In this document: piece after piece, positions 843 to 26,762 of the stretch
Numbering within the stretch: the stretch's first letter is position 1
How the letters are laid out: each line of letters opens with the position of its first letter
Assembly (NCBI GenBank): GCA_002269645.1
Contig: NIVC01004861.1
Coordinates: 1 to 33,009, forward strand
Source: Macrostomum lignano
Taxonomy: Eukaryota
Length of the DNA: 33,009 nt
Direction of reading: 5' to 3'
Program-made: the position numbers and the translations under genes
The notes under the pieces: model-generated
Told to the model about the DNA's origin: nothing
The model's database searches: none
What the model saw: the letters and a program-made list of their open reading frames with translations, nothing else

Positions 843-1894
<1,052 letters not shown>

Positions 1895-6039: not shown

Positions 6040-6900
6040 TTTTGGAGCTTAAACACTCCCTCTTGAAATTAAACACTCATTTCAGAGCTTAAACACTCAT
6101 TTTAGAGTTTAAATACTCATTTTGGAGTTTAAACCCCATTTCAGAGTTTAAACACTCATTTCAGAGTTTAAACACTCATTTTAGAGTTGAAAAACTCATC
6201 TCAGAGTTTAAACGCTCATTTCAGAGTTTAAACACTCATTTCAGAGTTTAAACACTCATTTTAGAGCTTAAATACTCATTTTAGAGCTTAAAAACTCATT
6301 TTTGAGTTTAAACACTCATTTCAGAGTTTAAACCTCATTTTAGAGCTAAAATACTCATTTCAGAGCTTAAACACTCATTTCAGAGTTTAAACAGTCATTT
6401 CAGAGTTTAAACACTCATTTCAGAGTTTAAACACTCATTTCAGAGTTTAAACACTCATTTTAGAGTTGAAAAACTCATCTCAGAGTTTAAACGCTCATTT
6501 CAGAGTTTAAACACTCATTTTAGAGCTTAAATACTCATTTTAGAGCTTAAACACTCATTTTAGAGTTTAAACGCTCTTTTTAGAGTTTAAACACTCATTT
6601 TAGAACTTAAACACTCATTTTAGAGCTTAAACACTCATTTTTGAGTTTAAACACTCATTTCAGAGTTTAAACCTCATTTTAGAGTTTAAACCTCATTTTA
6701 GAGCTAAAATACTCATTTCAGAGCTTAAACACTCATCTCAGAGTTTAAACACTCATTTCAGAGTTTAAACAGTCATTTCAGAGTTTAAACACTCATTTCA
6801 GAGTTTAAACACTCATTTCAGAGCTTAAACACTCATTTTAGAGTTTAAATACTCATTTCAGAGTTTAAACACTCTTTTTAGAGTTTAAACGCTCATTTTA
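6040..6900. repeat. 20-bp minisatellite (TTTCAGAGTTTAAACACTCA) in channel intron 1
   Basis: About 40 tandem units with a palindromic GTTTAAAC core. Confidence 0.95.
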
Positions 6901-7029: not shown

Positions 7030-7326
7030 GATTGCTCGGCGGCCACAGACGTGCTGGTGAATCTGCACATTGTGTCATTCAGCACCCTGAGCGTGCAGAA
7101 CATGGACTTCACCGTGAACATCTACTTGCGCATGATCTGGGAGGATGCCCGTTTGGCCTATTCAGCCTCCAATCCTAACGCTTCCGTCAGTCTGCACTCG
7201 ATGAAAGACAAAATCTGGATGCCGGATATCTTCTTTCGCAACGCAAAGCAGGTGGAAAATCATGCTGATCCGGTGCCCAACATCCTGGTCAAGCTGCGGC
7301 CGACGGGGCGCATCTACTTCTCACAG
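7030..7326 (+). CDS. Cys-loop chloride channel, exon 2 (loops D, A, E)
   Basis: Acceptor cttcaag|, then DCSAATDVLVNLHIVSFSTLSVQNMDFTVNIYLRMIWEDARL...KIWMPDIFFRNAK...NILVKLRPTGRIYFSQ, then donor |GTGAAC. Phase 0/0. Confidence 0.93.
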
Positions 7327-7341
7327 GTGAACTCAGCCTGA

Positions 7342-8127
<786 letters not shown>

Positions 8128-9762: not shown

Positions 9763-10598
9763 TTACAGTCTTTGTACTTTAGTGAAAGACCAGAAGATAC
9801 AGTCTTTGCACTTTAGTGAAAGACCAGATGCTACAGTCTTTGTAATTTAGTGAAAGACCAGATGCTACAGTCTTTGTAATTTAGTGAAAGACCAGATGCT
9901 ACAGTCTTTGTAATTTAGTGAAAGACCAGATGCTACAGTCTTTGTAATTTAGTGAAAGACTAGATGCTACAGTCTTTGTAATTTAGTGAAAGACCAGATG
10001 CTACAGTCTTTGTAATTTAGTGAAAGAGCAGAAGCTACAGTCATTGTACTTTAGTGAAAGAGCAGAAGCTACAGTCATTGTACTTTAGTGAAAGAGCAGA
10101 AGCTACAGTCATTGTACTTTAGTGAAAGAGCAGAAGCTACAGTCATTGTACTTTAGTGAAAGAGCAGAAGCTACAGTCATTGTACTTTAGTGAAAGAGCA
10201 GAAGCTACAGTCATTGTACTTTAGTGAAAGAGCAGAAGCTACAGTCATTGTACTTTAGTGAAAGAGCAGAAGCTACAGTCATTGTACTTTAGTGAAAGAG
10301 CAGAAGCTACAGTCTTTGTACTTTAGTGAAAGAGCAGAAGCTACAGTCTTTGTACTTTAGTGAAAGAGCAGAAGCTACAGTCATTGTACTTTAGTGAAAG
10401 AGCAGAAGCTACAGTCATTGTACTTTAGTGAAAGAGCAGAAGCTACAGTCATTGTACTTTAGTGAAAGAGCAGAAGCTACAGTCTTTGTACTTTAGTGAA
10501 AGAGCAGAAGCTACAGTCATTGTACTTTAGTGAAAGAGCAGAAGCTACAGTCTTTGTACTTTAGTGAAAGAGCAGAAGCTACAGTCTTTGTACTTTAG
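9763..10598. repeat. 34-bp minisatellite (TTTAGTGAAAGAGCAGAAGCTACAGTCATTGTAC)
   Basis: About 24 tandem units in two sequence subtypes. Confidence 0.95.
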
Positions 10599-11200
10599 TT
10601 GACCGCCAGCGCAATATTGGTCTCGCTACAGAATGGGTCCAAAAAGGTTCCCTTAACCATCACGCAGTTGCTTTGGCTTTTCAGCAAATGGGCTTTTCTG
10701 TTCTGAGGAAACAGGTGAAGAAGTCTACCCTACAAAGCTAGGGCGCCGCTGCGTGCAAAACAGCGTTCAATCTTAAAAAATTGCAATATGTACAAGACAG
10801 CTAACTTTATTATTTTTCGACTACTGACAACACAGTAGGGGTCCGCGTGGAAGTTAACTAGCGGCGGGGGGCAATAATGATGGATCTGTCTTAGTGGTAA
10901 GCCTGTGTACCAAAATTTACAATCTGCCTTAGATATCATTTACAAATGGATCGGCACTGCATTTCGAATATAGTCAGTATTAAATGTACTAAACTGTTGA
11001 AGGCATTCCCACTGTATTACCTGTGCAGATAAAGCTGCTGATGGTGAGTGCCTTCAGTGCCTTGGGTTATTGCTGTCTGTGTGGTCCTGGTTTCCGTGTG
11101 TATTAGAATTTTACTTTATAGCGAGACTTTCCACATTGTATGTCACCCTGTTGCATCTACCACTTCACACCATCAGTCACTCTACTATGTCTGCCACTGG

Positions 11201-11598: not shown

Positions 11599-12189
11599 CC
11601 TATACAGTCCCTACAATGTCTGTCACTCCCGTTTTCATTATTTTCCTTGTCACCCTGCCTCTCCATTCTTAGCATTCAGGCGTTGCAGAAAAAAGTCTGA
11701 TCAAATATCGGCGGTAAAATGGACAGGAAAATTTATTACTTTTTCATCGGCTTCCCCTCTTCTCCAAGCAGAGAGCAGAAAAAATGCAGGAAATCCGGCA
11801 CCGGAGCGTTAACACCACCCCCCGCGAAGGCCGGACTGCCTAAAGCCAATGACAGAGGAACCCTGTATATACAGAAGGCAGAGACAGTTTACCACAACTT
11901 CCAAGTTGACTTGGATAAGAGGATTTGCGTTCTGTAGTTGTTCCTACGGCCCGCCGCTTCCCTGAACCAACACGTCGCAAAACCCCTACACTTCAGCCTT
12001 TTATTTGCGCTTCACTCGTTTCCTAAAATTTCCCAAATCAGAGAAAAATTATTTTGCTCGCTTTCAATAATGCAAACACCGGAATAAGATTTTTGCCAGA
12101 ACCGGATGGCCAGAAACCGCCTGTGCTGCCCCAGTCTGCAGTTCACTGTCGGCTGACCGCTCAGCAAACACTGCCGGCTTACTGACAAT

Positions 12190-13090
12190 GCCTCTCTCCC
12201 TTTCCTCTCTCTCCTTTCTCTCTCTCCTCTCTCTCTCTCCTCTCTCTCCTCTCTCCCCTTTCTCTCTCCTCTCTCTCCTCTCTCTCCTTTCTCTCTCTCC
12301 TCTCTCTCCTCTCTCTCCTTTCTCTGTCCTCTCTGTCCTCTCTCTCCTTTCTCTCTCTCCTCTCTCTCTCCTCTCTCTCCTTTCTCTCTCTCTCCTCTCT
12401 CTCCTTTCTCTCTCTCTCCTCTCTCTCCTCTCTCTCCTTTCTCTCTCTCCTCTCTCTCCTTTCTCTCTCTCTCCTCTCTCTCCTCTCTCTCCTTTCTCTC
12501 TCTCCTCTCTCTCTCCTTTCTCTCTCTCCTCTCTCTCTCCTTTCTCTCTCTCCTCTCTCTCCTTTCTCTCTCTCCTTTCTCTCCTCTCTCTCCTTTCTCT
12601 CTCTCTCCTCTCTCTCCTTTCTCTCTCTCTCCTCTCTCTCCTTTCTCTCTCTCTCCTCTCTCTCCTCTCTCTCCTTTCTCTCTCTCCTCTCTCTCCTTTC
12701 TCTCTCTCTCCTCTCTCTCCTCTCTCTCCTTTCTCTCTCTCTCCTCTCTCTCCTCTCTCTCCTTTCTCTCTCTCTCCTCTCTCTCCTTTCTCTCTCTCTC
12801 CTCTCTCCTTTCTCTCTCTCTCCTCTCTCTCCTCTCCTTCCTTTCTCTCTCTCCTCTCTCTCCTTTCTCTCTCTCTCCTCTCTCTCCTCTCTCTCCTTTC
12901 TCTCTCTCCTCTCCCTCCTTTCTCTCTCTCTCCTCTCTCTCCTCTCTCTCCTTTCTCTCTCTCCTCTCTCTCCTTTCTTTCCTCTCTCTCCTCTCCCCCC
13001 TCTCTCTCCTCCCTATATCCTCTCTCTCCCCTCTCTCCTGTCTCTCTTTCCTATCCCTTCCTCTTCTATCTCCTCTCTCTCTTCTCTTTT
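12190..13090. repeat. CT-rich polypyrimidine microsatellite
   Basis: About 900 bp of almost pure C/T. Source of the S/L/P ORF 12188-13255. Confidence 0.97.
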
Positions 13091-13527
13091 CCGTCTCTAA
13101 TTTCTCAATCTAACTCTGAAATTTCCTGTCTCAGGCAAATACTCGTATTTCTCAAAGAGATTCAGTCTGAGCAGCCAGACTGTACATGTACTTTAGTAAA
13201 GCCCAGAATGTGCAAGCAAACAGTTTTTGTGGCTATCCTGAACAGCGATGTTTGAGCTCGTGAGAAGATTTCCGAAGCCCCCCCCCCTACCCAGAAACAT
13301 CGTGCACAATTCGATAATTATCGTGTAGCACGACGATTAGCCATTTTTAATTGCTCTGTATTAAACGGCGCCTAGGATTTTAAAAAGCTGCGGGTTAAAA
13401 CGTCTCTGCAAATCTTTTAATTTCCCAGGTCAGTGTCTGCTTCCCAATTAACTAAAGGAACTATATCAGCTATAGTAACTATAGTAACTAAATTGGTAGT
13501 CAGTTGAGATTCAAACGCTTGTTGCAT

Positions 13528-15089: not shown

Positions 15090-15326
15090 TCACTGAGCAG
15101 CGTCACAGGTTGCAGCCTCAATGCCTAAATGGCAAAGGCAGTTGGCGAAACGCCGAACTCGCACTTGTCCTCGCCAGTAAGGCACAGGGTAATGCAAGGC
15201 CGCTTTGGTGACTTGCTCATCGTCCCGGATCAACAGATCTTGAACGCACGGCCAGCCGCGGCCTCGACTTGAGTCCTTGATTGAGTCCACTGCCAGCTCC
15301 ACCCGTATTAGTACCAGGGGGAGTTG
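15090..15326 (-). CDS. Candidate terminal exon of an unidentified antisense gene nested in channel intron 3
   Basis: Unique, GC-rich open frame between two repeats: QLPLVLIRVELAVDSIKDSSRGRGWPCVQDLLIRDDEQVTKAALHYPVPYWRGQVRVRRFANCLCHLGIEAATCDAAQ*. The acceptor ctcag comes from the last minisatellite unit. It resembles the peptide at 18228-18321. Confidence 0.35.
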   Translation of the reverse strand, partial: QLPLVLIRVELAVDSIKDSSRGRGWPCVQDLLIRDDEQVTKAALHYPVPYWRGQVRVRRFANCLCHLGIEAATCDAAQ

Positions 15327-16422
15327 CTGAGATGCCAAGGGGGAGTTGCTGAGATGCCAAGGGGGAGTTGCTGAGATGCCAATGGGGAGTTGCTGAGATG
15401 CCAATGAAGAGTTGCTGAGATGCCAATGGGGAGTTGCTGAGATGCCAATAGGGAGTTGCTGAGATGCCAATGGGGAGTTGCTGAGATGCCAATTGGGAGT
15501 TGCTGAGATGCCAATGGGGAGTTGCTGAGATGCCAATAGGGAGTTGCTGAGATGCCAAGGGGGAGTCGCTGAGATGCCAATTGGGAGTTGCTGAGATGCC
15601 AAGGGGGAGTTGCTGAGATGCCAATGGGGAGTTGCTGAGATGCCAATGGGGAGTTGCTGAGATGCCAATTGGGAGTTGCTGAGATGCCAATGGGGAGTTG
15701 CTGAGATGCCAAGGGGGAGTTGCTGAGATGCCAATGGGGAGTTGCTGAGATGCCAAGGGGGAGTTGCTGAGATGCCAATGGGGAGTTGCTGAGATGCCAA
15801 TGGGGAGTTGCTGAGATGCCAATGGGGAGTTGCTGAGATGCCAAGGGGGAGTTGCTGAGATGCCAATGGGGAGTTGCTGAGATGCCAATAAAGAGTTGCT
15901 GAGATGCCAATTGGGAGTTGCTGAGATGCCAATAAAGAGTTGCTGAGATGCCAATGGGGAGTTGCTGAGATGCCAATAGGGAGTTGCTGAGATGCCAATT
16001 GGGAGTTGCTGAGATGCCAATGGGGAGTTGCTGAGATGCCAATGGGGAGTTGCTGAGATGCCAATAGGGAGTTGCTGAGATGCCAAGGGGGAGTTGCTGA
16101 GATGCCAATGGGGAGTTGCTGAGATGCCAATGGGGAGTTGCTGAGATGCCAAGGGGGAGTTGCTGAGATGCCAATTGGGAGTTGCTGAGATGCCAATGAA
16201 GAGTTGCTGAGATGCCAATGGGGAGTTGCTGAGATGCCAATGGGGAGTTGCTGAGATGCCAATGAAGAGTTGCTGAGATGCCAATGAAGAGTTGCTGAGA
16301 TGCCAATGGGGAGTTGCTGAGATGCCAATGGGGAGTTGCTGAGATGCCAATTGGGAGTTGCTGAGATGCCAATGAAGAGTTGCTGAGATGCCAATGGGGA
16401 GTTGCTGAGATGCCAATAGGGA
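15316..16422. repeat. 22-bp minisatellite (GGGGAGTTGCTGAGATGCCAAT)
   Basis: About 50 units with variation confined to a few positions. The 22-aa periodicity of the three minus-strand ORFs equals three units. Confidence 0.97.
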
Positions 16423-16560
16423 ATTTCTGAGTTACTATCAATACACAAGGCTTTAAACATGTTAATTAGTTCTTTTTCAAAAAGTTATTCCTTGATCCTA
16501 AGGAGGGTCTAATAAGAATCTCTTACTAAAGCTACCAGAACCCCACTCACCCGCCGACAG

Positions 16561-17136
16561 GCTAATGTCAGACTCAGACGGGCCTACGGTTTCTACCTGA
16601 TGAACACCTATGCCCCATTCACCCTGATGGTGTGCATCAGCTGGATCAGCTTCTGGATCGACGTCCGGGCTACTCCTGCCCGGGTCACCATCGCTTTCCT
16701 GACAGTGCTGGCTGTGGTGACGCAGAACGCCGGCACCCAGATGACGGGGATGCCCAGGGTGAGCTACGTGAAGGCTATCGACCTGTTCATGATGGCCAGC
16801 CTCATGTTCGTCATCGCCGCGCTCATGGAATTCGCCGCTGCCAGCTTCCTCACTCGGCAGCACGAGAAAGAGCTCGGCGAGCAGCCGTCGCGACGTCGAA
16901 GGCGCTCCTGCGCGCACGGCCGGCTGCCGCCTGCGGCTGGCAGTCCGAACGGCCTGGAGGACATGCTGATGTCCGAGGAGCGGACCAGGAAGATGCGCAG
17001 CTGGTGCTACAGAAATCCAAGGGTGAATAAGTTGGACTATTGCAGCAGGTTCCTGTTCCCACTGGCTTACCTGGTGTTCCAGGCTGCCTATTGGTCTTAT
17101 TATCTGCGGGACAGGGACAACTGCGGCCCCAGCTGA
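16561..17136 (+). CDS. Cys-loop chloride channel, exon 4 (M1-M4, stop)
   Basis: Acceptor ccgacag|, then ANVRLRRAYGFYLMNTYAPFTLMVCISWISFWID (M1), PARVTIAFLTVLAVVTQ (M2, anion-selective PAR motif), MPRVSYVKAIDLFMM (M3), LDYCSRFLFPLAYLVFQAAYW (M4). The spliced product is 442 aa. Confidence 0.96.
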   Translation, partial: ANVRLRRAYGFYLMNTYAPFTLMVCISWISFWIDVRATPARVTIAFLTVLAVVTQNAGTQMTGMPRVSYVKAIDLFMMASLMFVIAALMEFAAASFLTRQHEKELGEQPSRRRRRSCAHGRLPPAAGSPNGLEDMLMSEERTRKMRSWCYRNPRVNKLDYCSRFLFPLAYLVFQAAYWSYYLRDRDNCGPS

Positions 17137-18956: not shown

Positions 18957-19406
18957 ATGTCTAAGACGCTACCAACGAAGCAGTCATCCATGTCGGCGGT
19001 GAGGGCGGAGGACCCGCTGTCCACCCTGCTGACCAGGCTGCTGCGCCAGGGCAGCACCGCCGACGCCCTGAAGCTGCTCGACTCCGTGAGAGACGCTGGC
19101 GTTCGGGCCGCTCGCCTCGCTGACGCTCTGGACTGCGCGATGCGGCTGCCGCGGCCCGGCGCCGTGGTGGCCAGCCTGCTCAGTCAGCTGCTCGAAGCCG
19201 ACAACCCGGATCAGCAATCGGAAGTCGCCGCCACTGCGTCCGCCGCAGCCCTGAAATTTCTGGCCAACTTGTCGAAGAATTCGACCGCTCTGTACTCGGT
19301 GCTCGCCAGGCTGTCCAGCGGGCGGATTGTCGATGCGTTCCGCTGCTGCGTTGAGGCGGGCGAGGAGGAGACGGCGCTGCGACTGCTGCCGCATCTGCCA
19401 GTGCCG
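18957..19406 (+). CDS. Ankyrin + Mab-21/cGAS-like NTase fusion protein, exon 1 (helical/degenerate ankyrin region)
   Basis: GC-rich ORF from the ATG at 18957 (alternative ATG at 18990). Helical L/A-rich sequence. Phase-0 donor CCG|GTCAGT at the start of the GTTA array. Confidence 0.8.
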
Positions 19407-19532
19407 GTCAGTTACTTAGTTAGTTAATTAGTTAGTTAGTTAGTTAGTAAGTTAGTTAGTAAGTTAGTTAATTAGTTAGTAAGTTAGTAAGTTAGTCAGT
19501 CAGTCAGTCAGTTAGTCAGTTAGTTAGTTAGT

Positions 19533-19617
<85 letters not shown>

Positions 19618-19703
19618 CAGTTAGTTAGTCAGTCAGTTAGTCAGTTAGTTAGTTAGTTAGTTAGTTTAGTTAGTTAGTTAGTCAGTCAGTCAGTCAGTTA
19701 GTC

Positions 19704-19770
<67 letters not shown>

Positions 19771-19888
19771 CAGTTAGTCAGTTAGTCAGTTAGTTAGTTA
19801 GTTAGTTAGTTAGTCAGTCAGTTAGTCAGTTAGTTAGTTAGTTAGTTAGTTTAGTTAGTTAGTTAGTCAGTCAGTCAGTCAGTTAGTC

Positions 19889-19955
<67 letters not shown>

Positions 19956-19972
19956 CAGTTAGTCAGTTAGTC

Positions 19973-20011
<39 letters not shown>

Positions 20012-20032
20012 CAGTCAGTCAGTCAGTTAGTC

Positions 20033-20115
<83 letters not shown>

Positions 20116-20305
20116 AAGTTAGTCAGTCAGTCAGTCAGTTAGTCAGTTATTTAGTTAGTTAGTCAGTTAGTCAGTTAGTTAGTTAGTCAGTCAGTCAGTC
20201 AGTTAGTCAGTTAGTTAGTTAGTCAGTTAGTCAGTTAGTTAGTTAGTTTAGTTAGTTAGTCAGTTAGTTAGTTAGTAAGTTAGTCAGTCAGTCAGTCAGT
20301 TAGTC

Positions 20306-20344
<39 letters not shown>

Positions 20345-20373
20345 AAGTTAGTCAGTCAGTCAGTCAGTTAGTC

Positions 20374-20408
<35 letters not shown>

Positions 20409-20437
20409 AAGTTAGTCAGTCAGTCAGTCAGTTAGTC

Positions 20438-20472
<35 letters not shown>

Positions 20473-20493
20473 CAGTCAGTCAGTCAGTTAGTC

Positions 20494-20584
<91 letters not shown>

Positions 20585-20613
20585 AAGTTAGTCAGTCAGT
20601 CAGTCAGTTAGTC

Positions 20614-20644
<31 letters not shown>

Positions 20645-20655
20645 AAGTTAGTTAA

Positions 20656-20702
<47 letters not shown>

Positions 20703-21003
20703 ATTAGTTAGTTAGTTAGTTAGTAAGTTAGTTAGTCAGTCAGTCAGTTAGTCAGTTAGTTAGTTAGTTTAGTTAGTTAGTTAGTTAGTTAGTTAATTAG
20801 TTAGTTAGTAAGTTAGTCAGTCAGTCAGTCAGTTAGTCAGTTAGTTAGTTAGTTAGTTAGTCAGTTAGTCAGTTAGTTAGTTAGTCAGTCAGTCAGTCAG
20901 TTAGTCAGTTAGTTAGTTAGTCAGTTAGTCAGTTAGTTAGTTAGTTTAGTTAGTTAGTCAGTTAGTTAGTTAGTAAGTTAGTCAGTCAGTCAGTCAGTTA
21001 GTC

Positions 21004-21046
<43 letters not shown>

Positions 21047-21075
21047 AAGTTAGTCAGTCAGTCAGTCAGTTAGTC

Positions 21076-21170
<95 letters not shown>

Positions 21171-21199
21171 AAGTTAGTCAGTCAGTCAGTCAGTTAGTC

Positions 21200-21230
<31 letters not shown>

Positions 21231-21241
21231 AAGTTAGTTAA

Positions 21242-21276
<35 letters not shown>

Positions 21277-21342
21277 ATTAGTTAGTTAGTTAGTTAGTAA
21301 GTTAGTTAGTCAGTCAGTCAGTTAGTCAGTTAGTTAGTTAGT

Positions 21343-21379
<37 letters not shown>

Positions 21380-21584
21380 AAGTTAATCAGTCAGTCAGTC
21401 AGTTAGTCAGTTAGTTAGTTAGTTAGTCAGTTAGTCAGTTAGTTAGTTAGTCAGTCAGTCAGTCAGTTAGTCAGTTAGTTAGTTAGTCAGTTAGTCAGTT
21501 AGTTAGTTAGTTTAGTTAGTTAGTTAGTTAGTTAGTTAGTAAGTTAGTCAGTCAGTCAGTCAGTTAGTCAGTTAGTTAGTTAGT

Positions 21585-21625
<41 letters not shown>

Positions 21626-21699
21626 CAGTTAGTTAGTTAGTTAGTTAGTCAGTTAGTTAGTTAGTTAGTTAGTTTAGTTAGTTAGTTAGTTAGTTAGTC

Positions 21700-21734
<35 letters not shown>

Positions 21735-21795
21735 AAGTTAGTCAGTCAGTCAGTTAGTCAGTTAGTTGTCAGTTAGTTAGTTAGTTAGTTAGTTA
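19407..21795. repeat. (GTTA)n/(GTCA)n/(GTAA)n microsatellite filling intron 1 of the ANK-Mab21 gene
   Basis: About 2.4 kb, with recurring multi-unit blocks. Confidence 0.97.
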
Positions 21796-21872
21796 GGGGT
21801 TTGTGCACACCAAGCCGTAGGCACAATGGACTAAAAAGTACACTCCAAATTGTCCTTTTAATCGTTCCGCAG

Positions 21873-22204
21873 CCCTCGTCCACGGCCGCTCAGTGGCTCA
21901 TGCTGGCGTCAGAGCGAGGCCTCCTGCGGCTCCTGGCCGGCCTGCTTAACAGCCGCTGCCTGCAGGCGGCTCCAGCGGTTCTTAACGCTGAGGACGCCCG
22001 TGGCCGAACGGCTCTGGCGGCAGCCTGCTTGGCCGGACAGGCTGGTGCGGCCCGCCTGCTGCTGGACAGCGGGTCAGCCGATCCCGGCCGGGTGGAAACG
22101 GACGGTCGGACTTGCAGGCAGCTGCTGCCGGCGGCCGGAGCGGCTGGCGAAAACTCGGCAGCCTTCGACGAGATCGCCCTGCTCCTGGACACCGCCGAGA
22201 GTCT
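21873..22204 (+). CDS. ANK-Mab21 fusion, exon 2 (ankyrin repeats)
   Basis: Acceptor gttccgcag|. Ankyrin consensus DARGRTALAAACLAGQAGAARLLLDSGSADP and a further D-GRT motif. Phase-2 donor CT|GTGAGA at 22205. Confidence 0.88.
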
Positions 22205-22430: not shown

Positions 22431-22530
22431 TCTTCTTCTTGATCCTACCCTTTCTAGTCTTTTTCTTCTTCCTAATCCTGCTCTTTTTGGTCTTAACCTT
22501 GTTGATCTTTTTTAGCTAGGAAGATAGACT

Positions 22531-23572
22531 GTTAAGTCTCCAGATAGAGTGCTTAGTCTCCAGATAGAGTGCTTAGTCTCCAGATAGAGTGCTTAGTCTC
22601 CAGATAGAGTGCTTAGTCTCCAGATAGAGTGCTTAGTCTCCAGATAGAGTGCTTAGTCTCCAGATAGAGTGCTTAGTCTCCAGATAGAGTGCTTAGTCTC
22701 CAGATAGAGTGTTAAGTCTCCAGATAGAGTGCTTAGTCTCCAGATAGAGTGCTTAGTCTCCAGATAGAGTGCTTAGTCTCCAGATAGAGTGTTAAGTCTC
22801 CAGATAGAATGTTAAGTCTCCAGATAGAGTGCTTAGTCTCCAGATAGAGTGCTTAGTCTCCAGATAGAGTGCTTAGTCTCCAGATAGAGTGCTTAGTCTC
22901 CAGATAGAGTGCTTAGTCTCCAGATAGAGTGCTTAGTCTCCAGATAGAGTGTTAAGTATCCAGATAGAGTGTTAAGTCTCCAGATAGAGTGCTTAGTCTC
23001 CAGATAGAGTGCTTAGTCTCCAGATAGAGTGCTTAGTCTCCAGATAGAGTGCTTAGTCTCCAGATAGAGTGCTTAGTCTCCAGATAGAGTGCTTAGTCTC
23101 CAGATAGAGTGCTTAGTCTCCAGATAGAGTGCTTAGTCTCCAGATAGAGTGTTTAGTCTCCAGATAGAGTGCTTAGTCTCCAGATAGAGTGTTAAGTCTC
23201 CAGATAGAGTGTTAAGTCTCCAGATAGAGTGTTAAGTCTCCAGATAGAGTGCTTAGTCTCCAGATAGAGTGCTTAGTCTCCAGATAGAGTGCTTAGTCTC
23301 CAGATAGAGTGCTTAGTCTCCAGATAGAGTGCTTAGTCTCCAGATAGAGTGTTAAGTCTCCAGATAGAATGTTAAGTCTCCAGATAGAGTGCTTAGTCTC
23401 CAGATAGAGTGCTTAGTCTCCAGATAGAGTGTTAAGTATCCAGATAGAGTGTTTAGTCTCCAGATAGAGTGCTTAGTCTCCAGATAGAGTGCTTAGTCTC
23501 CAGATAGAGTGCTTAGTCTCCAGATAGAGTGCTTAGTCTCCAGATAGAGTGCTTAGTCTCCAGATAGAGTTT
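22531..23572. repeat. 20-bp minisatellite (CCAGATAGAGTGCTTAGTCT)
   Basis: About 52 near-identical units with no spacers. Confidence 0.97.
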
Positions 23573-23700: not shown

Positions 23701-23981
23701 CGGCAGCAGCCAGTCAGAGCGAGCTCAGAGCCGGCAATTGCACAGCTTCCTAACAAGATGCGGCTTCACTGCCAGGCGAGCCGAGCTCCACTGCGAGGCG
23801 GCCGACTTTCTGCTTGTCCGAATCGCCCGGCCACTGGCCGCCGCAGCGGACAGATCCGGCCAGCTGGCCTGCCACCTGGTTGGCAGCTACGCGGAAGGCT
23901 GGGGCGCCTGCCTGCTGCAGGCGAATGGCCGGCTGGCGGCCGACTCCAATGTTAACTGGCTGCTGTGTCGCGGCAACTGCG
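23701..23981 (+). CDS. ANK-Mab21 fusion, exon 3 (NTase activation loop GS and degenerate DxD)
   Basis: Acceptor ctcacgcag| (phase 2, matches exon 2), then ...RQLHSFLTRCGF...CHLVGSYAEGWGACLLQANGRLAADSNVNWLLCRGNC, then phase-1 donor G|GTGAGT. Confidence 0.85.
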
Positions 23982-24379
23982 GTGAGTGAAATTCAATTGA
24001 TCACGTGACTTCTCCAGGCTTACAGCAAGGACTACTAGACTATATCAAAGTGTTCCTAGTGGTCCTTGGCTTATAGTTAGGCCATGAGGAAAGTGTCCAA
24101 ATTTCCGCGGAACCGCCGCGGAATTTCGTGGAAAACTGTGTGAAATGTGCTCCTCTTGGCTGGGTCAGTGGGGATGAGAATGGCTAGGATTCCATATTCC
24201 TTCCTTGACTATGCTACTTTTTCTTTGTAGTCGCACATTATTAACGAGATTTAAAGTCATACTTGCTAGTTATCATATATCCCTTAGGTGCTTCGATTCA
24301 TTTTTTAATAATGTCAGGCCATCACGTCACCGAAACTCAAAAAGGCTGAAATATTGAAGCGCTTTTTGATACGAAACAA

Positions 24380-24792
24380 AGAGAAAGAAAGAGAAGGAGA
24401 GAGGCGGCAGGGAGAAGGAGAGAGGTGGCAGAGAGAAGGAGAGAGGTGGCAGAGAGAAGGAGAGAGGCGGCAGGGAGAAGGAGAGAGGCGGCAGGGAGAA
24501 GGAGAGAGGTGGCAGAGAGAAGGAGAGAGGTGGCAGAGAGAAGGAGAGAGGGGGCAGAGAGAAGGAGAAAGCGGCAGGGGAGAAGGAGAGAGGCGGCAGA
24601 GCGGAGAGAGGTGGCAGAGAGAAGGAGAGAGGTGGCAGAGAGGAGAGAGGCGGCAGAGAGAAGGAGAGAGGCGGCAAGGGAGGAGAGAGGCGGCAAAGAG
24701 AAGGAGAGAGGCGGCAAGGGAGGAGAGAGGCGGCAGAGAGAAGGAGAGAGGCGGCAAGGGAGGAGAGAGGCGGCAAGGAGAAGGAGAGAGGC
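24380..24792. repeat. About 21-bp GA-rich minisatellite (GAAGGAGAGAGG[C/T]GGCAG[G/A]GA)
   Basis: Tandem purine-rich units. Source of ORFs 24314-24830. Confidence 0.92.
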
Positions 24793-25287
24793 TTAGGGTT
24801 CAGTGGAATTGGCGTGACTGCTTGACTTGATTTGAGGCAGTGTCTGTGTCTGTATTAACAGATTCTTATATGTCTGCAGGTGCTAAATTGGAAACCTGAA
24901 GTACAAGGAGGCTACAACTGATTTTCTTAGAAATGAGCTGTAGGTCGATTTGTCGTATTTAGGATGTTCTCAAGAAATCCGATTTTTCTCCACTGAGTTC
25001 GTCTATGGCAAAACTCCTTTCAGTGCTATGCATTCTCGAGAGCATATTACACGTTTCTTATCGGCCTCCAGCTCAAAAAATAAAATAACTTATGAATCCT
25101 ATCAATGGCCCATACATTCACTCGATCCTAGTTTGGTATCGACAGTCTCTTCTTAGAGACCTGTATGCGGTGTGTTTTGCGTTAAAGTGTCTTATTAATG
25201 CTTATTTTGTGCCTGCTGTCGACTTAGCTCGTACTAAGCATTAATTATTAATTGCTTACCGCCTTGCACCACCAATACACACTGTAG

Positions 25288-26762
25288 AACCTGAGCGGGA
25301 GCCCCGCACCATCGGCGACTGCCAGCAAGCTGGAATTTCGGTGCGCACCGACTGGCAGACGGGCAGGCGATGGCAGAATCCGCACGAGACGGCTCGCATA
25401 GTGCAGCTGTTCCGCGGCGGCGGCGGCGGCTCCGCCAGGCAGTTGATGGTTCGTCAGACTCGCGACCTACCGGCCTGCTTTGCCAGTCAGGAGAGGCGAC
25501 TCATGCGATGCCTGAGCACCGTTCAGGGCCAGCTGTTCACCATAGTGAAGCTCGTGTTCAAGCGAATGCTGCCATCCATGGGAGCCGCCGGGCTGACTTC
25601 CTACCACGCCAAGACAGTTCTGTTCTTCCTGCTGGCTCGGCACGCCCGTCGACGCAGCTGGTGGACGGTGGAGAATCTGCTGCCGCTAGTGAGGAAGACG
25701 CTGCATCTGACGCTGGAGCTGCTGGAACTGGACGCCAGGCCGTGCGTGGCCATGCCGCACTTCTTCGCCGACAACTGTCAGTTAGCATTTCGCGATCCAT
25801 CGGTGGACACGAAATTGCGCGTACGCGAGTCGCTCAGTGCGTTGTGCGCTGATCCGAAAAAAGTTGACGACTTTCTTAGAAAGCACCTGCGTCCGGTGGT
25901 GTCGCAGAGGCAGCCGCTGTTCTTTCATCCGTTCACGTTGCTGCCGGCTGACTTTTTTAGCTTAGAACTGATGGAGACGCCTAACTCGGATTCTGCCACA
26001 AACCAAGCGTTCGCGGATGTGTACCTGCTGGTCCAGCAGTGCCTTAGCGACTTGTCCTCATCGAGTCAGGCTGACAAGCAGTCCCGACTGACAAGGATCA
26101 GCTGCCTGCCAGCTTGGTGTCTTTGCTCCCGCCAGTGCTTGACAGCTCTAGCATGGCTTAGCTTTGGCGATCGAACTCGGGCCACCAAGGTGTTAGTACC
26201 GCAGACCAGTCACCGAGTCCAGCGGTACTGGGACTCGGAGCGCTGCTGTTTCTTTGACGGCCTGCTATCGAAAGAAGGAGCTGCTGGCGGTGTCCTTTAT
26301 GCGAATCCAAGCAACTGCGGCGACTGGGGTTGGCGATTTTGTTTTAGCAGTCGAGAAGTTCGAGTGGCTCTGGAAGAGCTGCCGCAGTTCACCCAGGCTC
26401 TACTCCAGCCAAGGCCTGACTCGCTTGACCGTCTGTACGTAAACTTTCGTTGCATATCCTGGAGCCTGATGGCTGAGCTGTTGCCAAAGCACATTGTGTC
26501 CCCAGCCAATTGGTACGCTGAGATGAAGTTCGACCCCGATCATCAAGAGCTGCTTACTTTGGCTCATTACAGCGACAGTCCATTGCACCTTCACTTCTGT
26601 CGGACAATGCTGGAGGAACTGCGCAATCGGTCGCGTCTGGATTTGAGCTGCGAGATCGAGGCGGTGCAGACCAAGCTCAGCCGACTCACCAGAGGATCAG
26701 ATGGCTGGAATGGTGTCAAGCTTCGGCCAAAAAGGATGGGATTGTCCAGTTGCAGGAGCTAA
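25288..26762 (+). CDS. ANK-Mab21 fusion, exon 4 (Mab-21 core and C-terminal helical lobe, stop)
   Basis: Acceptor cactgtag| (phase 1, matches exon 3). Mab-21 motifs: CFASQERRLMRCLSTVQGQLFTIVKLVFK, LTSYHAKTVLFFLL, WTVENLLPLV, MPHFFADN. The four exons total 2538 nt (845 aa + stop). Confidence 0.9.

What the first reader, a model, noticed from the sequence alone, without database searches (positions are those of the whole stretch)
23876..23959. Catalytic DxD of the cGAS-like domain is replaced by NVN: a candidate pseudoenzyme
Seen: LVGSYAEGWG...ADSNVNWLL, with codons AAT-GTT-AAC at 23948-23956 where Pol-beta-superfamily NTases have [D/E]-h-[D/E]. Each Asn is one G-to-A change from Asp. The GS loop is retained, the frame is intact, and the usual SFSxxE motif is altered (CFASQE). 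Established: these acidic residues bind the catalytic metals, and D-to-N substitutions abolish activity in cGAS/OAS-type enzymes. Inactive Mab-21-fold proteins such as MiD51 act as nucleotide-binding adaptors. Inference: a dead NTase kept as a decoy, inhibitor or ligand-binding scaffold for active paralogs.
Basis: partly seen in the sequence, partly recalled or inferred. Interest (0 to 1): 0.7.

Follow-up and report, generated by a model that had tools for sequence, protein, structure and literature searches.

The report
Flatworm cGAS-like gene without catalytic core
A transcribed gene of the flatworm Macrostomum lignano encodes a relative of the cGAS-like immune sensors that has lost its metal-binding residues and the whole catalytic sheet but keeps the rest of the protein, so it is very probably a non-enzymatic relative, of a kind already known in this superfamily.

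Summary
Codons AAT-GTT-AAC at 23948-23956 encode N-V-N. At these two positions 94% and 93% of 54 non-redundant relatives have Asp (D-[IVLM]-D).

The window is a whole contig of the Macrostomum lignano Mlig_3_7 assembly. The finding lies in exon 3 of a four-exon gene, BOX15_Mlig033708g3 (845 aa). The protein has ankyrin repeats, a cGAS-like/Mab-21 module and a family-specific C-terminal domain. It belongs to a large M. lignano expansion of cGLR-like genes. Li et al. 2023 cloned five M. lignano relatives for their cGLR screen, including one paralog aligned here.

The loss is larger than two D-to-N changes. A family profile built without this protein matches it in two pieces. About 100 profile positions between them have no counterpart; they cover the NTase beta-sheet, the third catalytic Asp and conserved His/Cys motifs. 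In their place are 61 unrelated residues that AlphaFold2 models with low confidence.

- The flanking parts keep nearly all family-conserved residues.
- All four assembled copies carry NVN, and two have intact reading frames.
- dN/dS between diverged copies is 0.25 (19 changes, p = 0.003).
- The annotation was built from RNA-seq.

It is most likely a dead, retained cGLR-like scaffold. Its role is unknown, and an N-to-D revertant should not restore activity.

The parts
18957..19406 (+). Exon 1 (codons 1-150). N-terminal region with no confident domain; it diverges from the paralogs' extra ankyrin repeats.
   Evidence: The exon model translates exactly to P0018/PAA46429.1. tblastn of P0001 agrees. 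Pfam gives only a weak HEAT-like hit.
21873..22204 (+). Exon 2. Weakly matching ankyrin repeats (aa 159-230 = 21897-22112).
   Evidence: Pfam Ank_2 E = 1.3e-4 and 22.9 bits, below the cut-off of 27.3. Paralogs score 52-90 bits.
23701..23981 (+). Exon 3. Holds the conserved N-terminal helix, strand 1, the GS loop (G322-S323 = 23882-23887) and strand 2, which carries NVN.
   Evidence: The family profile matches aa 274-351 to nodes 1-71. The AF2 model is confident here, pLDDT 80-97.
23948..23956 (+). AAT GTT AAC = N344-V345-N346, in place of the catalytic D-h-D.
   Evidence: The same in all four genomic copies.
23982..25287 (+). Intron 3 (GT-AG). Contains a 21-bp tandem repeat at 24390-24792 and no remnant of the missing core coding sequence.
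   Evidence: tblastn of paralogs P0002, P0007 and P0016 finds no hit here. Tandem repeats are listed. The intron has about the same length in the other three copies.
25288..25460 (+). 5' part of exon 4. With 23972-23981 it encodes aa 352-412. These 61 residues stand where relatives have about 100 residues of NTase beta-sheet core, including the third catalytic Asp. A possible relic of the ancestral acceptor (cag|AAT) lies at 25374-25376.
   Evidence: No match to family profile nodes 72-174. pLDDT is 33-48. Most family-conserved columns in this stretch are changed or aligned to gaps. Introns of P0002 and P0038 map to the equivalent of about Q384/N385.
25476..25493 (+). CFASQE, the altered version of the family's [VI]S[FT]xxxE (cGAS SFSHIE-like) motif.
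   Evidence: The conserved Arg (94% of relatives) and Ser (94%) are P416 and C418 here; E423 is kept.
25461..25949 (+). Mab-21 C-terminal helical lobe (aa 413-575), well conserved.
   Evidence: The family profile matches nodes 175-332 at 141 bits. pLDDT is 90-98. Pfam Mab-21_C is weak, 18-19 bits against a cut-off of 24.1. 22 of 27 family-conserved columns are kept.
25950..26762 (+). Family-specific C-terminal extension (aa 576-845) and stop codon. Function unknown.
   Evidence: 35-37% identity to the closest paralogs P0002 and P0007, 21% to the distant P0016. Shared motifs are DWxWRFC, YVNFRC and ELLTLAHYSD. No Pfam domain.

Best explanation
The finding lies in exon 3 of a spliced, transcript-annotated Macrostomum lignano gene (BOX15_Mlig033708g3, 845 aa). 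The protein has weakly matching ankyrin repeats, a cGAS-like (Mab-21/cGLR) module and a family-specific C-terminal domain. It is a divergent member (about 35% identity) of a large M. lignano expansion of cGLR-like genes, almost all of which keep the GS...D-h-D...D catalytic signature.

In this member the nucleotidyltransferase site is gone. Both metal-binding Asp are Asn. The central part of the core, including the strand with the third Asp, is replaced by about 61 unrelated residues modelled with low confidence. The replacement may have come about through shifted splice sites; that step is inferred.

The N-terminal helix, the GS loop, the first two strands, the Mab-21 helical lobe and the C-terminal domain remain conserved, and the coding sequence shows purifying selection.

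The protein therefore cannot plausibly make a nucleotide second messenger. It most likely acts without catalysis, through its retained helical and repeat surfaces, as a scaffold or regulator. That role is inferred and unspecified. Shown: loss of the catalytic parts and signs of constraint.
For: - Identity and gene model.
- NVN against D-h-D: all 15 closest paralogs and 93-94% of 54 non-redundant relatives have Asp.
- Core loss: the family HMM built without this protein aligns only nodes 1-71 and 175-332. MAFFT places the 'RPAxD...CC' strand opposite gaps. AF2 (29-sequence alignment, pLDDT 80.8, pTM 0.80) gives pLDDT 33-48 for this stretch and only two strands in the N-terminal NTase part.
- Mosaic conservation: about 32 of 38 family-conserved columns are kept outside the DxD-to-SFS stretch, against 3 of 17 within it. 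Identity is 46% (N-terminal part), 25% (core remnant) and 44% (helical lobe).
- Family assignment: PDB profile hits to cGAS, Sp-cGLR1 and Mab21L1. Foldseek top hits are Sp-cGLR1, cGAS, MB21D2 and MiD51. Paralog P0003 (PAA68676.1) and four other M. lignano relatives were cloned as candidate cGLRs by Li et al. 2023.
- Retention: all four genomic copies keep NVN, and two have intact 845-codon frames. Window versus L003 gives 8 non-synonymous and 11 synonymous changes, dN/dS 0.25, binomial p = 0.003. Exons differ by 0.75% and alignable intron by 2-6%.
- Expression: the GenBank models derive from RNA-seq-guided transcript assembly.
Against: - The selection estimate rests on only 19 substitutions.
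- Two of the four copies carry 1-bp indels. L002 has two deletions. L003 has one insertion, and a UniRef model (P0020) ends at the same point. These may be real frameshifts rather than assembly errors.
- The protein sits on one of the longest branches of the family tree.
- Its ankyrin and Mab-21_C Pfam scores fall below the curated cut-offs.
- No ortholog from another species was found, so long-term conservation of NVN cannot be shown.
- Expression is inferred from how the annotation was made. No reads were inspected.
- No biochemical data exist for any member of this family. The main text of Li et al. does not mention Macrostomum.
Confidence: 0.68

Rival explanations
1. It is a decaying gene. 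One redundant copy in a very large, fast-turnover family lost its function and is drifting towards pseudogene status. It is still transcribed and, by luck, still open in some copies.
For: - It has a long branch.
- The catalytic core is eroded by several independent lesions.
- The ankyrin repeats match weakly.
- L002 and L003 carry frameshifting 1-bp indels, and the annotators' models for them are truncated (P0017, P0019).
- The same truncation appears in P0020.
Against: - Two copies keep an 845-codon frame across four exons with canonical splice sites.
- At about 65% amino-acid divergence from its nearest relatives, a drifting sequence would be expected to carry stop codons.
- Losses are concentrated in the core, while most family-conserved positions elsewhere are kept.
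- dN/dS is 0.25, p = 0.003, and synonymous changes still dominate downstream of the L003 indel.
- Exons are 3-8 times less diverged than introns.
- The indels lie in or beside homopolymer runs, or at a polymorphic site, in a PacBio-based assembly.
Confidence: 0.2
2. The apparent loss of the core is an artefact. An exon encoding the beta-sheet lies in an unassembled or collapsed repeat within intron 3, or the transcript model is wrong.
For: - Introns here are filled with tandem repeats.
- The assembly is known to be redundant and repeat-rich.
- The intron position differs from that of paralogs P0002 and P0038.
Against: - Four separately assembled contigs show the same exon structure, and intron 3 is about the same length in each (1306-1411 bp).
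- No paralog-like coding remnant is found anywhere in the window.
- The annotated junction is the one found that combines a strong donor with an open, in-frame continuation; the relic acceptor at 25376/25377 would need a phase-0 donor, and the only one seen is weak (manual reading of the sequence).
- The models derive from RNA-seq.
- NVN is independent of any missing exon.
Confidence: 0.07
3. It is still an active nucleotidyltransferase that uses a non-canonical metal site, for example the family-conserved D342 with Asn carbonyls or acidic residues of the linker.
For: - The GS loop and D342 are kept.
- The linker contains several Asp and Glu residues.
- Low AF2 confidence does not prove disorder.
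Against: - All three canonical carboxylates are absent.
[quoted passage not shown] They confirmed this dependence by mutagenesis in four enzymes.
- Only two strands are modelled in the N-terminal NTase part.
Confidence: 0.03

Closest known systems
Animal cGAS-like receptors (cGLRs; Li et al. 2023, PMC9980059), including the M. lignano candidates they cloned (PAA68676.1 = P0003, PAA93208.1 and others)
   Same: Homologous along its whole length to those M. lignano proteins (E about 1e-77). Shares the N-terminal helix, the h-x-GS loop, the Mab-21 helical lobe and, like some cGLRs, an ankyrin-repeat fusion. Sp-cGLR1 is the best structural match.
   Different: It fails the defining active-site motif. 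NVNW replaces [DE]h[DE]h, and the h[DE]h strand is absent. The central part of the NTase core is missing. It was not found in the supplementary tables of that paper that are held here.
MiD49/MiD51 (mitochondrial dynamics proteins; catalytically inactive Mab-21-fold adaptors)
   Same: A Mab-21-fold protein without transferase activity that works as an adaptor. MiD51 is among the top structural matches.
   Different: From general knowledge, MiD51 keeps a complete NTase fold and binds ADP or GDP in the pocket. Here the sheet that forms the pocket is missing, so nucleotide binding is doubtful. MiD proteins also have no ankyrin repeats or C-terminal extension.
Mab21L1/Mab21L2
   Same: Members of the cGAS/Mab-21 superfamily with no demonstrated enzymatic activity. 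The legend of Figure 1 in Li et al. states they lack a predicted functional active site. Mab21L1 is a sequence hit of the family profile.
   Different: Mab21L proteins are compact, highly conserved single-domain developmental proteins with a full fold. This protein is lineage-specific, fast-evolving, multi-domain and lacks the core.
OASL (inactive OAS-family paralog; from general knowledge, not tested here)
   Same: A template-independent NTase-fold innate-immune paralog that has lost catalytic residues and is retained as a regulator alongside active paralogs.
   Different: OASL keeps the full OAS fold and RNA binding and carries ubiquitin-like domains. It belongs to a different subfamily and has a different domain context.

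Membership tests
cGLR (criteria of Li et al. 2023) | Active-site motif h[QT]GS X8-20 [DE]h[DE]h X50-90 h[DE]h | tested here: not met
   The window protein reads LVGS, then 20 residues, then NVNW. No h[DE]h strand can be aligned. Paralogs read MTGS, 20 residues, DIDW, about 57 residues, then QDT.
cGLR (criteria of Li et al. 2023) | [quoted passage not shown] | tested here: inconclusive
   The N-terminal helix, GS loop, strand 2 (profile nodes 1-71) and the helix bundle (nodes 175-332) match. Nodes 72-174 of the core have no counterpart.
cGLR (criteria of Li et al. 2023) | Predicted structural homology to known cGLR/CD-NTase enzymes | tested here: inconclusive
   Foldseek top hits are Sp-cGLR1, cGAS, MB21D2, MiD51 and OAS1 with probability 1.0. 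But E is 5e-3 to 0.1, TM is about 0.35, and most alignments span about 120-155 columns. The match is partial.
Mab-21 superfamily (Pfam) | PF20266 Mab-21_C above the gathering score | tested here: not met
   18.2-19.3 bits against a cut-off of 24.1 for the window protein. Paralogs P0002, P0016 and P0021 pass with 27-36 bits, and the window protein is clearly homologous to them.
Mab-21 superfamily (Pfam) | PF03281 Mab-21 nucleotidyltransferase domain | tested here: not met
   No hit in the window protein or in the paralogs. P0016 hits NTP_transf_2 at 19.5 bits, just below its cut-off of 21.
M. lignano ankyrin-cGLR-like expansion | Full-length homology, including the GS[YF]x[ED]GW loop and the family-specific C-terminal domain | tested here: met
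   E = 3.9e-77 to P0002 with 96% query coverage. 815 bits to the family profile, although that profile included the window protein itself. Shared motifs are shown.
M. lignano ankyrin-cGLR-like expansion | S-D-[IVLM]-D catalytic strand and the RPAxD third-Asp strand | tested here: not met
Pseudoenzyme | Homolog of an enzyme family that lacks the catalytic residues | tested here: met
Pseudoenzyme | Retained under purifying selection and expressed | tested here: inconclusive
   dN/dS is 0.25 with p = 0.003, but from only 19 changes. Exons are less diverged than introns. The annotation is transcript-derived, but no reads were seen. Two copies carry indels.
Pseudoenzyme | Lack of catalytic activity shown experimentally | not testable with these tools
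   Needs a recombinant protein assay.
MiD51-like nucleotide-binding adaptor | Intact NTase pocket that binds a nucleotide without turnover | not testable with these tools
   The sheet that lines the pocket is missing or modelled with low confidence, so binding looks unlikely. It was not measured.

The most novel reading that the evidence does not exclude
In M. lignano the cGLR fold may have been repeatedly converted from a second-messenger synthase into a non-enzymatic sensor or scaffold module.

The window gene (NVN) groups, in a simple neighbour-joining tree, with other long-branch members that have different, seemingly independent lesions of the DxD. These are DMN in P0031, DIN in P0033 and GID in P0034. 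P0031 (with its cluster mate P0173) and P0033 are fused to ankyrin repeats and a caspase domain.

On this reading the window protein would be a dedicated regulator of a flatworm-specific cGLR network, either a dominant-negative partner or a ligand sink. Alternatively it would be a messenger-independent sensor coupled to effectors through protein-protein contacts.
Probability: 0.15. Interest if true: 0.6.

Novelty: new member of a known kind. Interest (0 to 1): 0.33.

Why it matters
Catalytically dead members of the cGAS/Mab-21/OAS superfamily are already known (MiD49/51, Mab21L1/2, OASL). One more is not a surprise in itself.

Its value is as a marker. [quoted passage not shown] The profile search gave 83 clusters (50% identity) below E = 1e-30, and every one checked by name was from M. 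lignano.

Within this expansion, catalysis seems to have been lost several times, and sometimes next to a caspase domain. M. lignano is a transgenic model, so it could be used to ask what a core-less cGLR does, and whether such proteins regulate active paralogs or signal without a nucleotide messenger.

Tried and rejected
- The first AF2 run used only 6 aligned sequences and gave pLDDT 48, so it was unusable for the NTase part. It was replaced by a 29-sequence run.
- Two word-indexed homolog searches returned only M. lignano proteins and no ortholog between 50% and 90% identity. A branch-specific dN/dS across species was therefore impossible. The copies inside the assembly were used instead.
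- I first took E388 (NPHETARIV) as the equivalent of the third catalytic Asp, from the 16-sequence alignment. I rejected this after the wider alignment and the profile search. They place NPHETA opposite the paralogs' QPAVTA and leave the RPAxD strand without a counterpart.
- I looked for a missed exon in intron 3 with tblastn of three paralogs at a permissive threshold and found none.
- I considered the relic acceptor at 25376/25377 as the real one. It needs a phase-0 donor. The only candidate, AAT|GTTAAC, is weak, and combining this acceptor with the strong donor at 23981/2 shifts the frame out of the Mab-21 lobe. I kept the annotated junction.
- Literature searches for the gene identifiers and for Macrostomum together with cGAS gave nothing specific.
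- I did not check whether M. lignano has STING.

Full report
**What the sequence is.** The window has short GC-rich exons separated by introns packed with tandem repeats. Cluster look-up shows that the window is a whole 33,009-bp contig of assembly GCA_002269645.1 (Mlig_3_7). Its gene is BOX15_Mlig033708g3 (PAA46429.1, P0018, 845 aa). The exon model 18957-19406, 21873-22204, 23701-23981, 25288-26762 on the + strand translates exactly to that protein. All three introns are GT-AG.

**Check of the observation.** Window 23876-23959 translates to LVGSYAEGWGACLLQANGRLAADSNVNW. Positions 23948-23956 are AAT GTT AAC. CFASQE is at 25476-25493 in exon 4. The 15 closest paralogs, all from M. lignano, read DSDIDW or DSDIDV at the aligned position. 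Among 54 non-redundant relatives the two columns are Asp in 94% and 93% of sequences. Paralog codons are GAC ATT GAC and GAC ATC GAC. The same NVN codons are present in three further genomic copies (L001, L002, L003) and in a UniRef gene model (P0020).

**Which family.** On its own the protein gives only a sub-threshold Pfam hit to Mab-21_C, 18-19 bits against a cut-off of 24.1. Paralogs pass that cut-off, and the most distant one nearly reaches NTP_transf_2 over the GS...DxD stretch. A profile of the family hits cGAS, Sp-cGLR1 and Mab21L1 in the PDB at E of about 1e-5, over the helical lobe only.

Li et al. 2023 (PMC9980059) define cGLRs by three criteria. These are the motif h[QT]GS X8-20 [DE]h[DE]h X50-90 h[DE]h, homology over both lobes, and AlphaFold similarity. 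Their list of cloned candidates contains five M. lignano proteins. One is PAA68676.1, which is P0003 in my alignment, and another is PAA93208.1. The paralogs (MTGS, 20 residues, DIDW, about 57 residues, QDT) are therefore already regarded as candidate cGLRs. The main text of that paper does not mention Macrostomum, so I know of no activity reported for them.

An exhaustive HMMER search found 907 cluster representatives at E <= 1e-3 and 83 at E <= 1e-30. Every one I looked up by name is from M. lignano. [quoted passage not shown]

**The loss is much larger than two substitutions.** In the wider alignment (A4, 29 sequences) the window protein has gaps opposite several conserved features. These are the FHL..GxC segment, the conserved GH, and the 'RPAxD...A..CC' strand that carries the third catalytic Asp. 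I built a profile from the 28 relatives alone and searched the window protein with it. It matched in two separate pieces. Nodes 1-71 matched aa 274-351 and nodes 175-332 matched aa 413-575. Nodes 72-174 were left unmatched. In their place the protein has 61 residues, aa 352-412, with no detectable similarity.

Of 55 columns conserved in at least 85% of relatives, about 32 of 38 outside this stretch are kept. Between the DxD and the SFS motif only 3 of 17 are kept. Identity to the closest paralog is 46% in the N-terminal part, 25% in the core remnant (with 36 paralog residues missing), 44% in the helical lobe and 35% in the C-terminal extension.

AlphaFold2 with the 29-sequence alignment gave a good model overall (pLDDT 80.8, pTM 0.80). 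The N-terminal helix, strand 1, the GS turn, strand 2 and the whole helical lobe are confident. Residues 86-139 of the model (aa 359-412) have pLDDT 33-48 and no sheet. Foldseek against the PDB returns Sp-cGLR1, cGAS, MB21D2, MiD51 and OAS1 as top hits with probability 1.0. The coverage is partial, however: E is 5e-3 to 0.1, TM is about 0.35, and most alignments span about 120-155 columns. All three canonical carboxylates are therefore absent, and most of the sheet that holds them is missing.

**How the core may have been lost (inference).** In paralogs P0002 and P0038 the intron inside this region lies just before '[SC]QPA'. That corresponds to about Q384/N385 of the window protein, where a cag|AAT remains in frame at 25374-25376. 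The window gene instead splices from 23981 to 25288. Its exon 3 ends ten codons after NVNW, and its exon 4 starts about 30 codons upstream of the old acceptor position. A shift of both splice sites would explain the result. It would drop the 3' part of the old exon and turn former intron into coding sequence. A further deletion of about 24 codons would have removed the third-Asp strand. No remnant of the lost coding sequence is detectable in the intron.

**Is it maintained or decaying?** The four assembled copies differ little. L001 has two substitutions. L002 has two 1-bp deletions. L003 has 19 substitutions and one 1-bp insertion next to a T6 run. Window versus L003 gives 8 non-synonymous and 11 synonymous changes, so dN/dS is 0.25. 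Under neutrality 74% of changes should be non-synonymous, which gives a binomial p of 0.003. Exons differ by 0.75% and alignable intron by 2-6%. Synonymous changes also predominate downstream of the L003 indel.

The GenBank annotation of this assembly was built from RNA-seq by genome-guided transcript assembly, and low-expression novel transcripts were discarded. This indirectly supports both transcription and the splice junctions. The assembly is known to be redundant because the sequenced line carries duplicated chromosomes, which explains the four copies.

Against retention, the numbers are small. The indels might be real; P0020, a separate UniRef gene model, ends at the same point as the L003 model. 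The protein also sits on one of the longest branches of the tree. No ortholog from another species was found. I put a retained non-catalytic protein at about 0.68, decay at 0.2, an assembly or annotation artefact at 0.07 and residual activity at 0.03.

**Mechanism.** What is shown: the protein lacks every element required for two-metal nucleotidyl transfer in this family. It keeps the helical lobe, the N-terminal helix, the family-specific C-terminal domain and weakly matching ankyrin repeats. What is inferred: it acts through protein-protein or protein-ligand contacts of those retained surfaces.

The MiD51-like nucleotide-binding idea is weakened because the pocket-forming sheet is gone. An N-to-D revertant should not regain activity.

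**Context in the family.** Degenerate DxD motifs occur in a few other members: DMN (P0031), DIN (P0033, P0090, P0105), GID (P0034, P0045) and SIK (P0109, P0133). In a simple neighbour-joining tree the window protein groups with P0031, P0033, P0034 and the intact P0038. All are on long branches, so long-branch attraction is possible. P0031 (with its cluster mate P0173) and P0033 combine the cGLR-like module with ankyrin repeats and a C-terminal caspase domain. This suggests, but does not show, that the fold is reused as a non-enzymatic module in this species.

**Novelty and score.** Dead members of the cGAS/Mab-21/OAS superfamily are well known. This is a new member of that kind, with an unusually thorough loss of the core, in a species-restricted expansion. 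I score interest at 0.33. The more novel reading is repeated conversion of cGLRs into messenger-independent sensors or regulators. I give it a probability of about 0.15 and an interest of about 0.6 if true.

Noticed in passing
window 7051-7341 and 16600-17136 (+): Two exons of a Cys-loop ligand-gated ion channel gene upstream of the cGLR-like gene. Pfam gives Neur_chan_LBD E = 2e-19 and Neur_chan_memb E = 1.2e-23. They are separated by about 9 kb that is almost entirely tandem repeats.
   Followed up: partly
window 846-1894, 6069-6898, 7338-8101, 9764-10599, 12192-13097, 15318-16431, 19410-21796, 22522-23570, 24390-24792 and others: Roughly a third of the window is tandem repeat with periods of 3-70 bp. 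(AGTT)n fills nearly all of intron 1 of the gene, and a 20-mer repeated 52 times fills most of intron 2. These arrays create long spurious ORFs on both strands, for example 15090-16460 (-) and 12188-13255 (+).
   Followed up: partly
P0031 (locus L006), its cluster mate P0173 (PAA80948.1) and P0033; M. lignano: Relatives with a degenerate DxD (DMN, DIN) are single reading frames that combine the cGLR-like module, ankyrin repeats and a C-terminal caspase domain (Peptidase_C14, E about 1e-25). I did not find this architecture described. It could also be a fused gene model.
   Followed up: partly
L002 (positions equivalent to window 19105 and 26356) and L003 (equivalent to window 25953): The other assembly copies carry 1-bp indels. 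One deletion in L002 lies exactly at the A/G polymorphic site (E711/G711), which suggests a consensus error at a collapsed site. The L003 insertion sits beside a T6 run, and a UniRef model (P0020) is truncated at the same point, so it may be real.
   Followed up: partly
window 25374-25376: An in-frame cag|AAT lies at the position that corresponds to the intron acceptor of paralogs P0002 and P0038. It may be a relic of the ancestral splice site, now inside exon 4.
   Followed up: partly
L001 24819-29043 and L002 15885-19777 (about 5.8 kb downstream of the gene; beyond or at the very end of the window): The downstream neighbour in the other copies is a large Tudor/B-box protein gene. Two UniRef gene models (P0024, P0184) fuse exon 4 of the cGLR-like gene to it, probably a gene-prediction artefact.
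   Followed up: no
paralog alignment A4, columns about 195-225 (no counterpart in the window protein): Immediately after the third-Asp strand, most relatives have a conserved A-x3-CC motif, often followed by YP. Upstream they have FH-x(3-5)-C-x-C and GH. This may be a metal-binding or structural Cys/His cluster. All of it is missing in the window protein.
   Followed up: no
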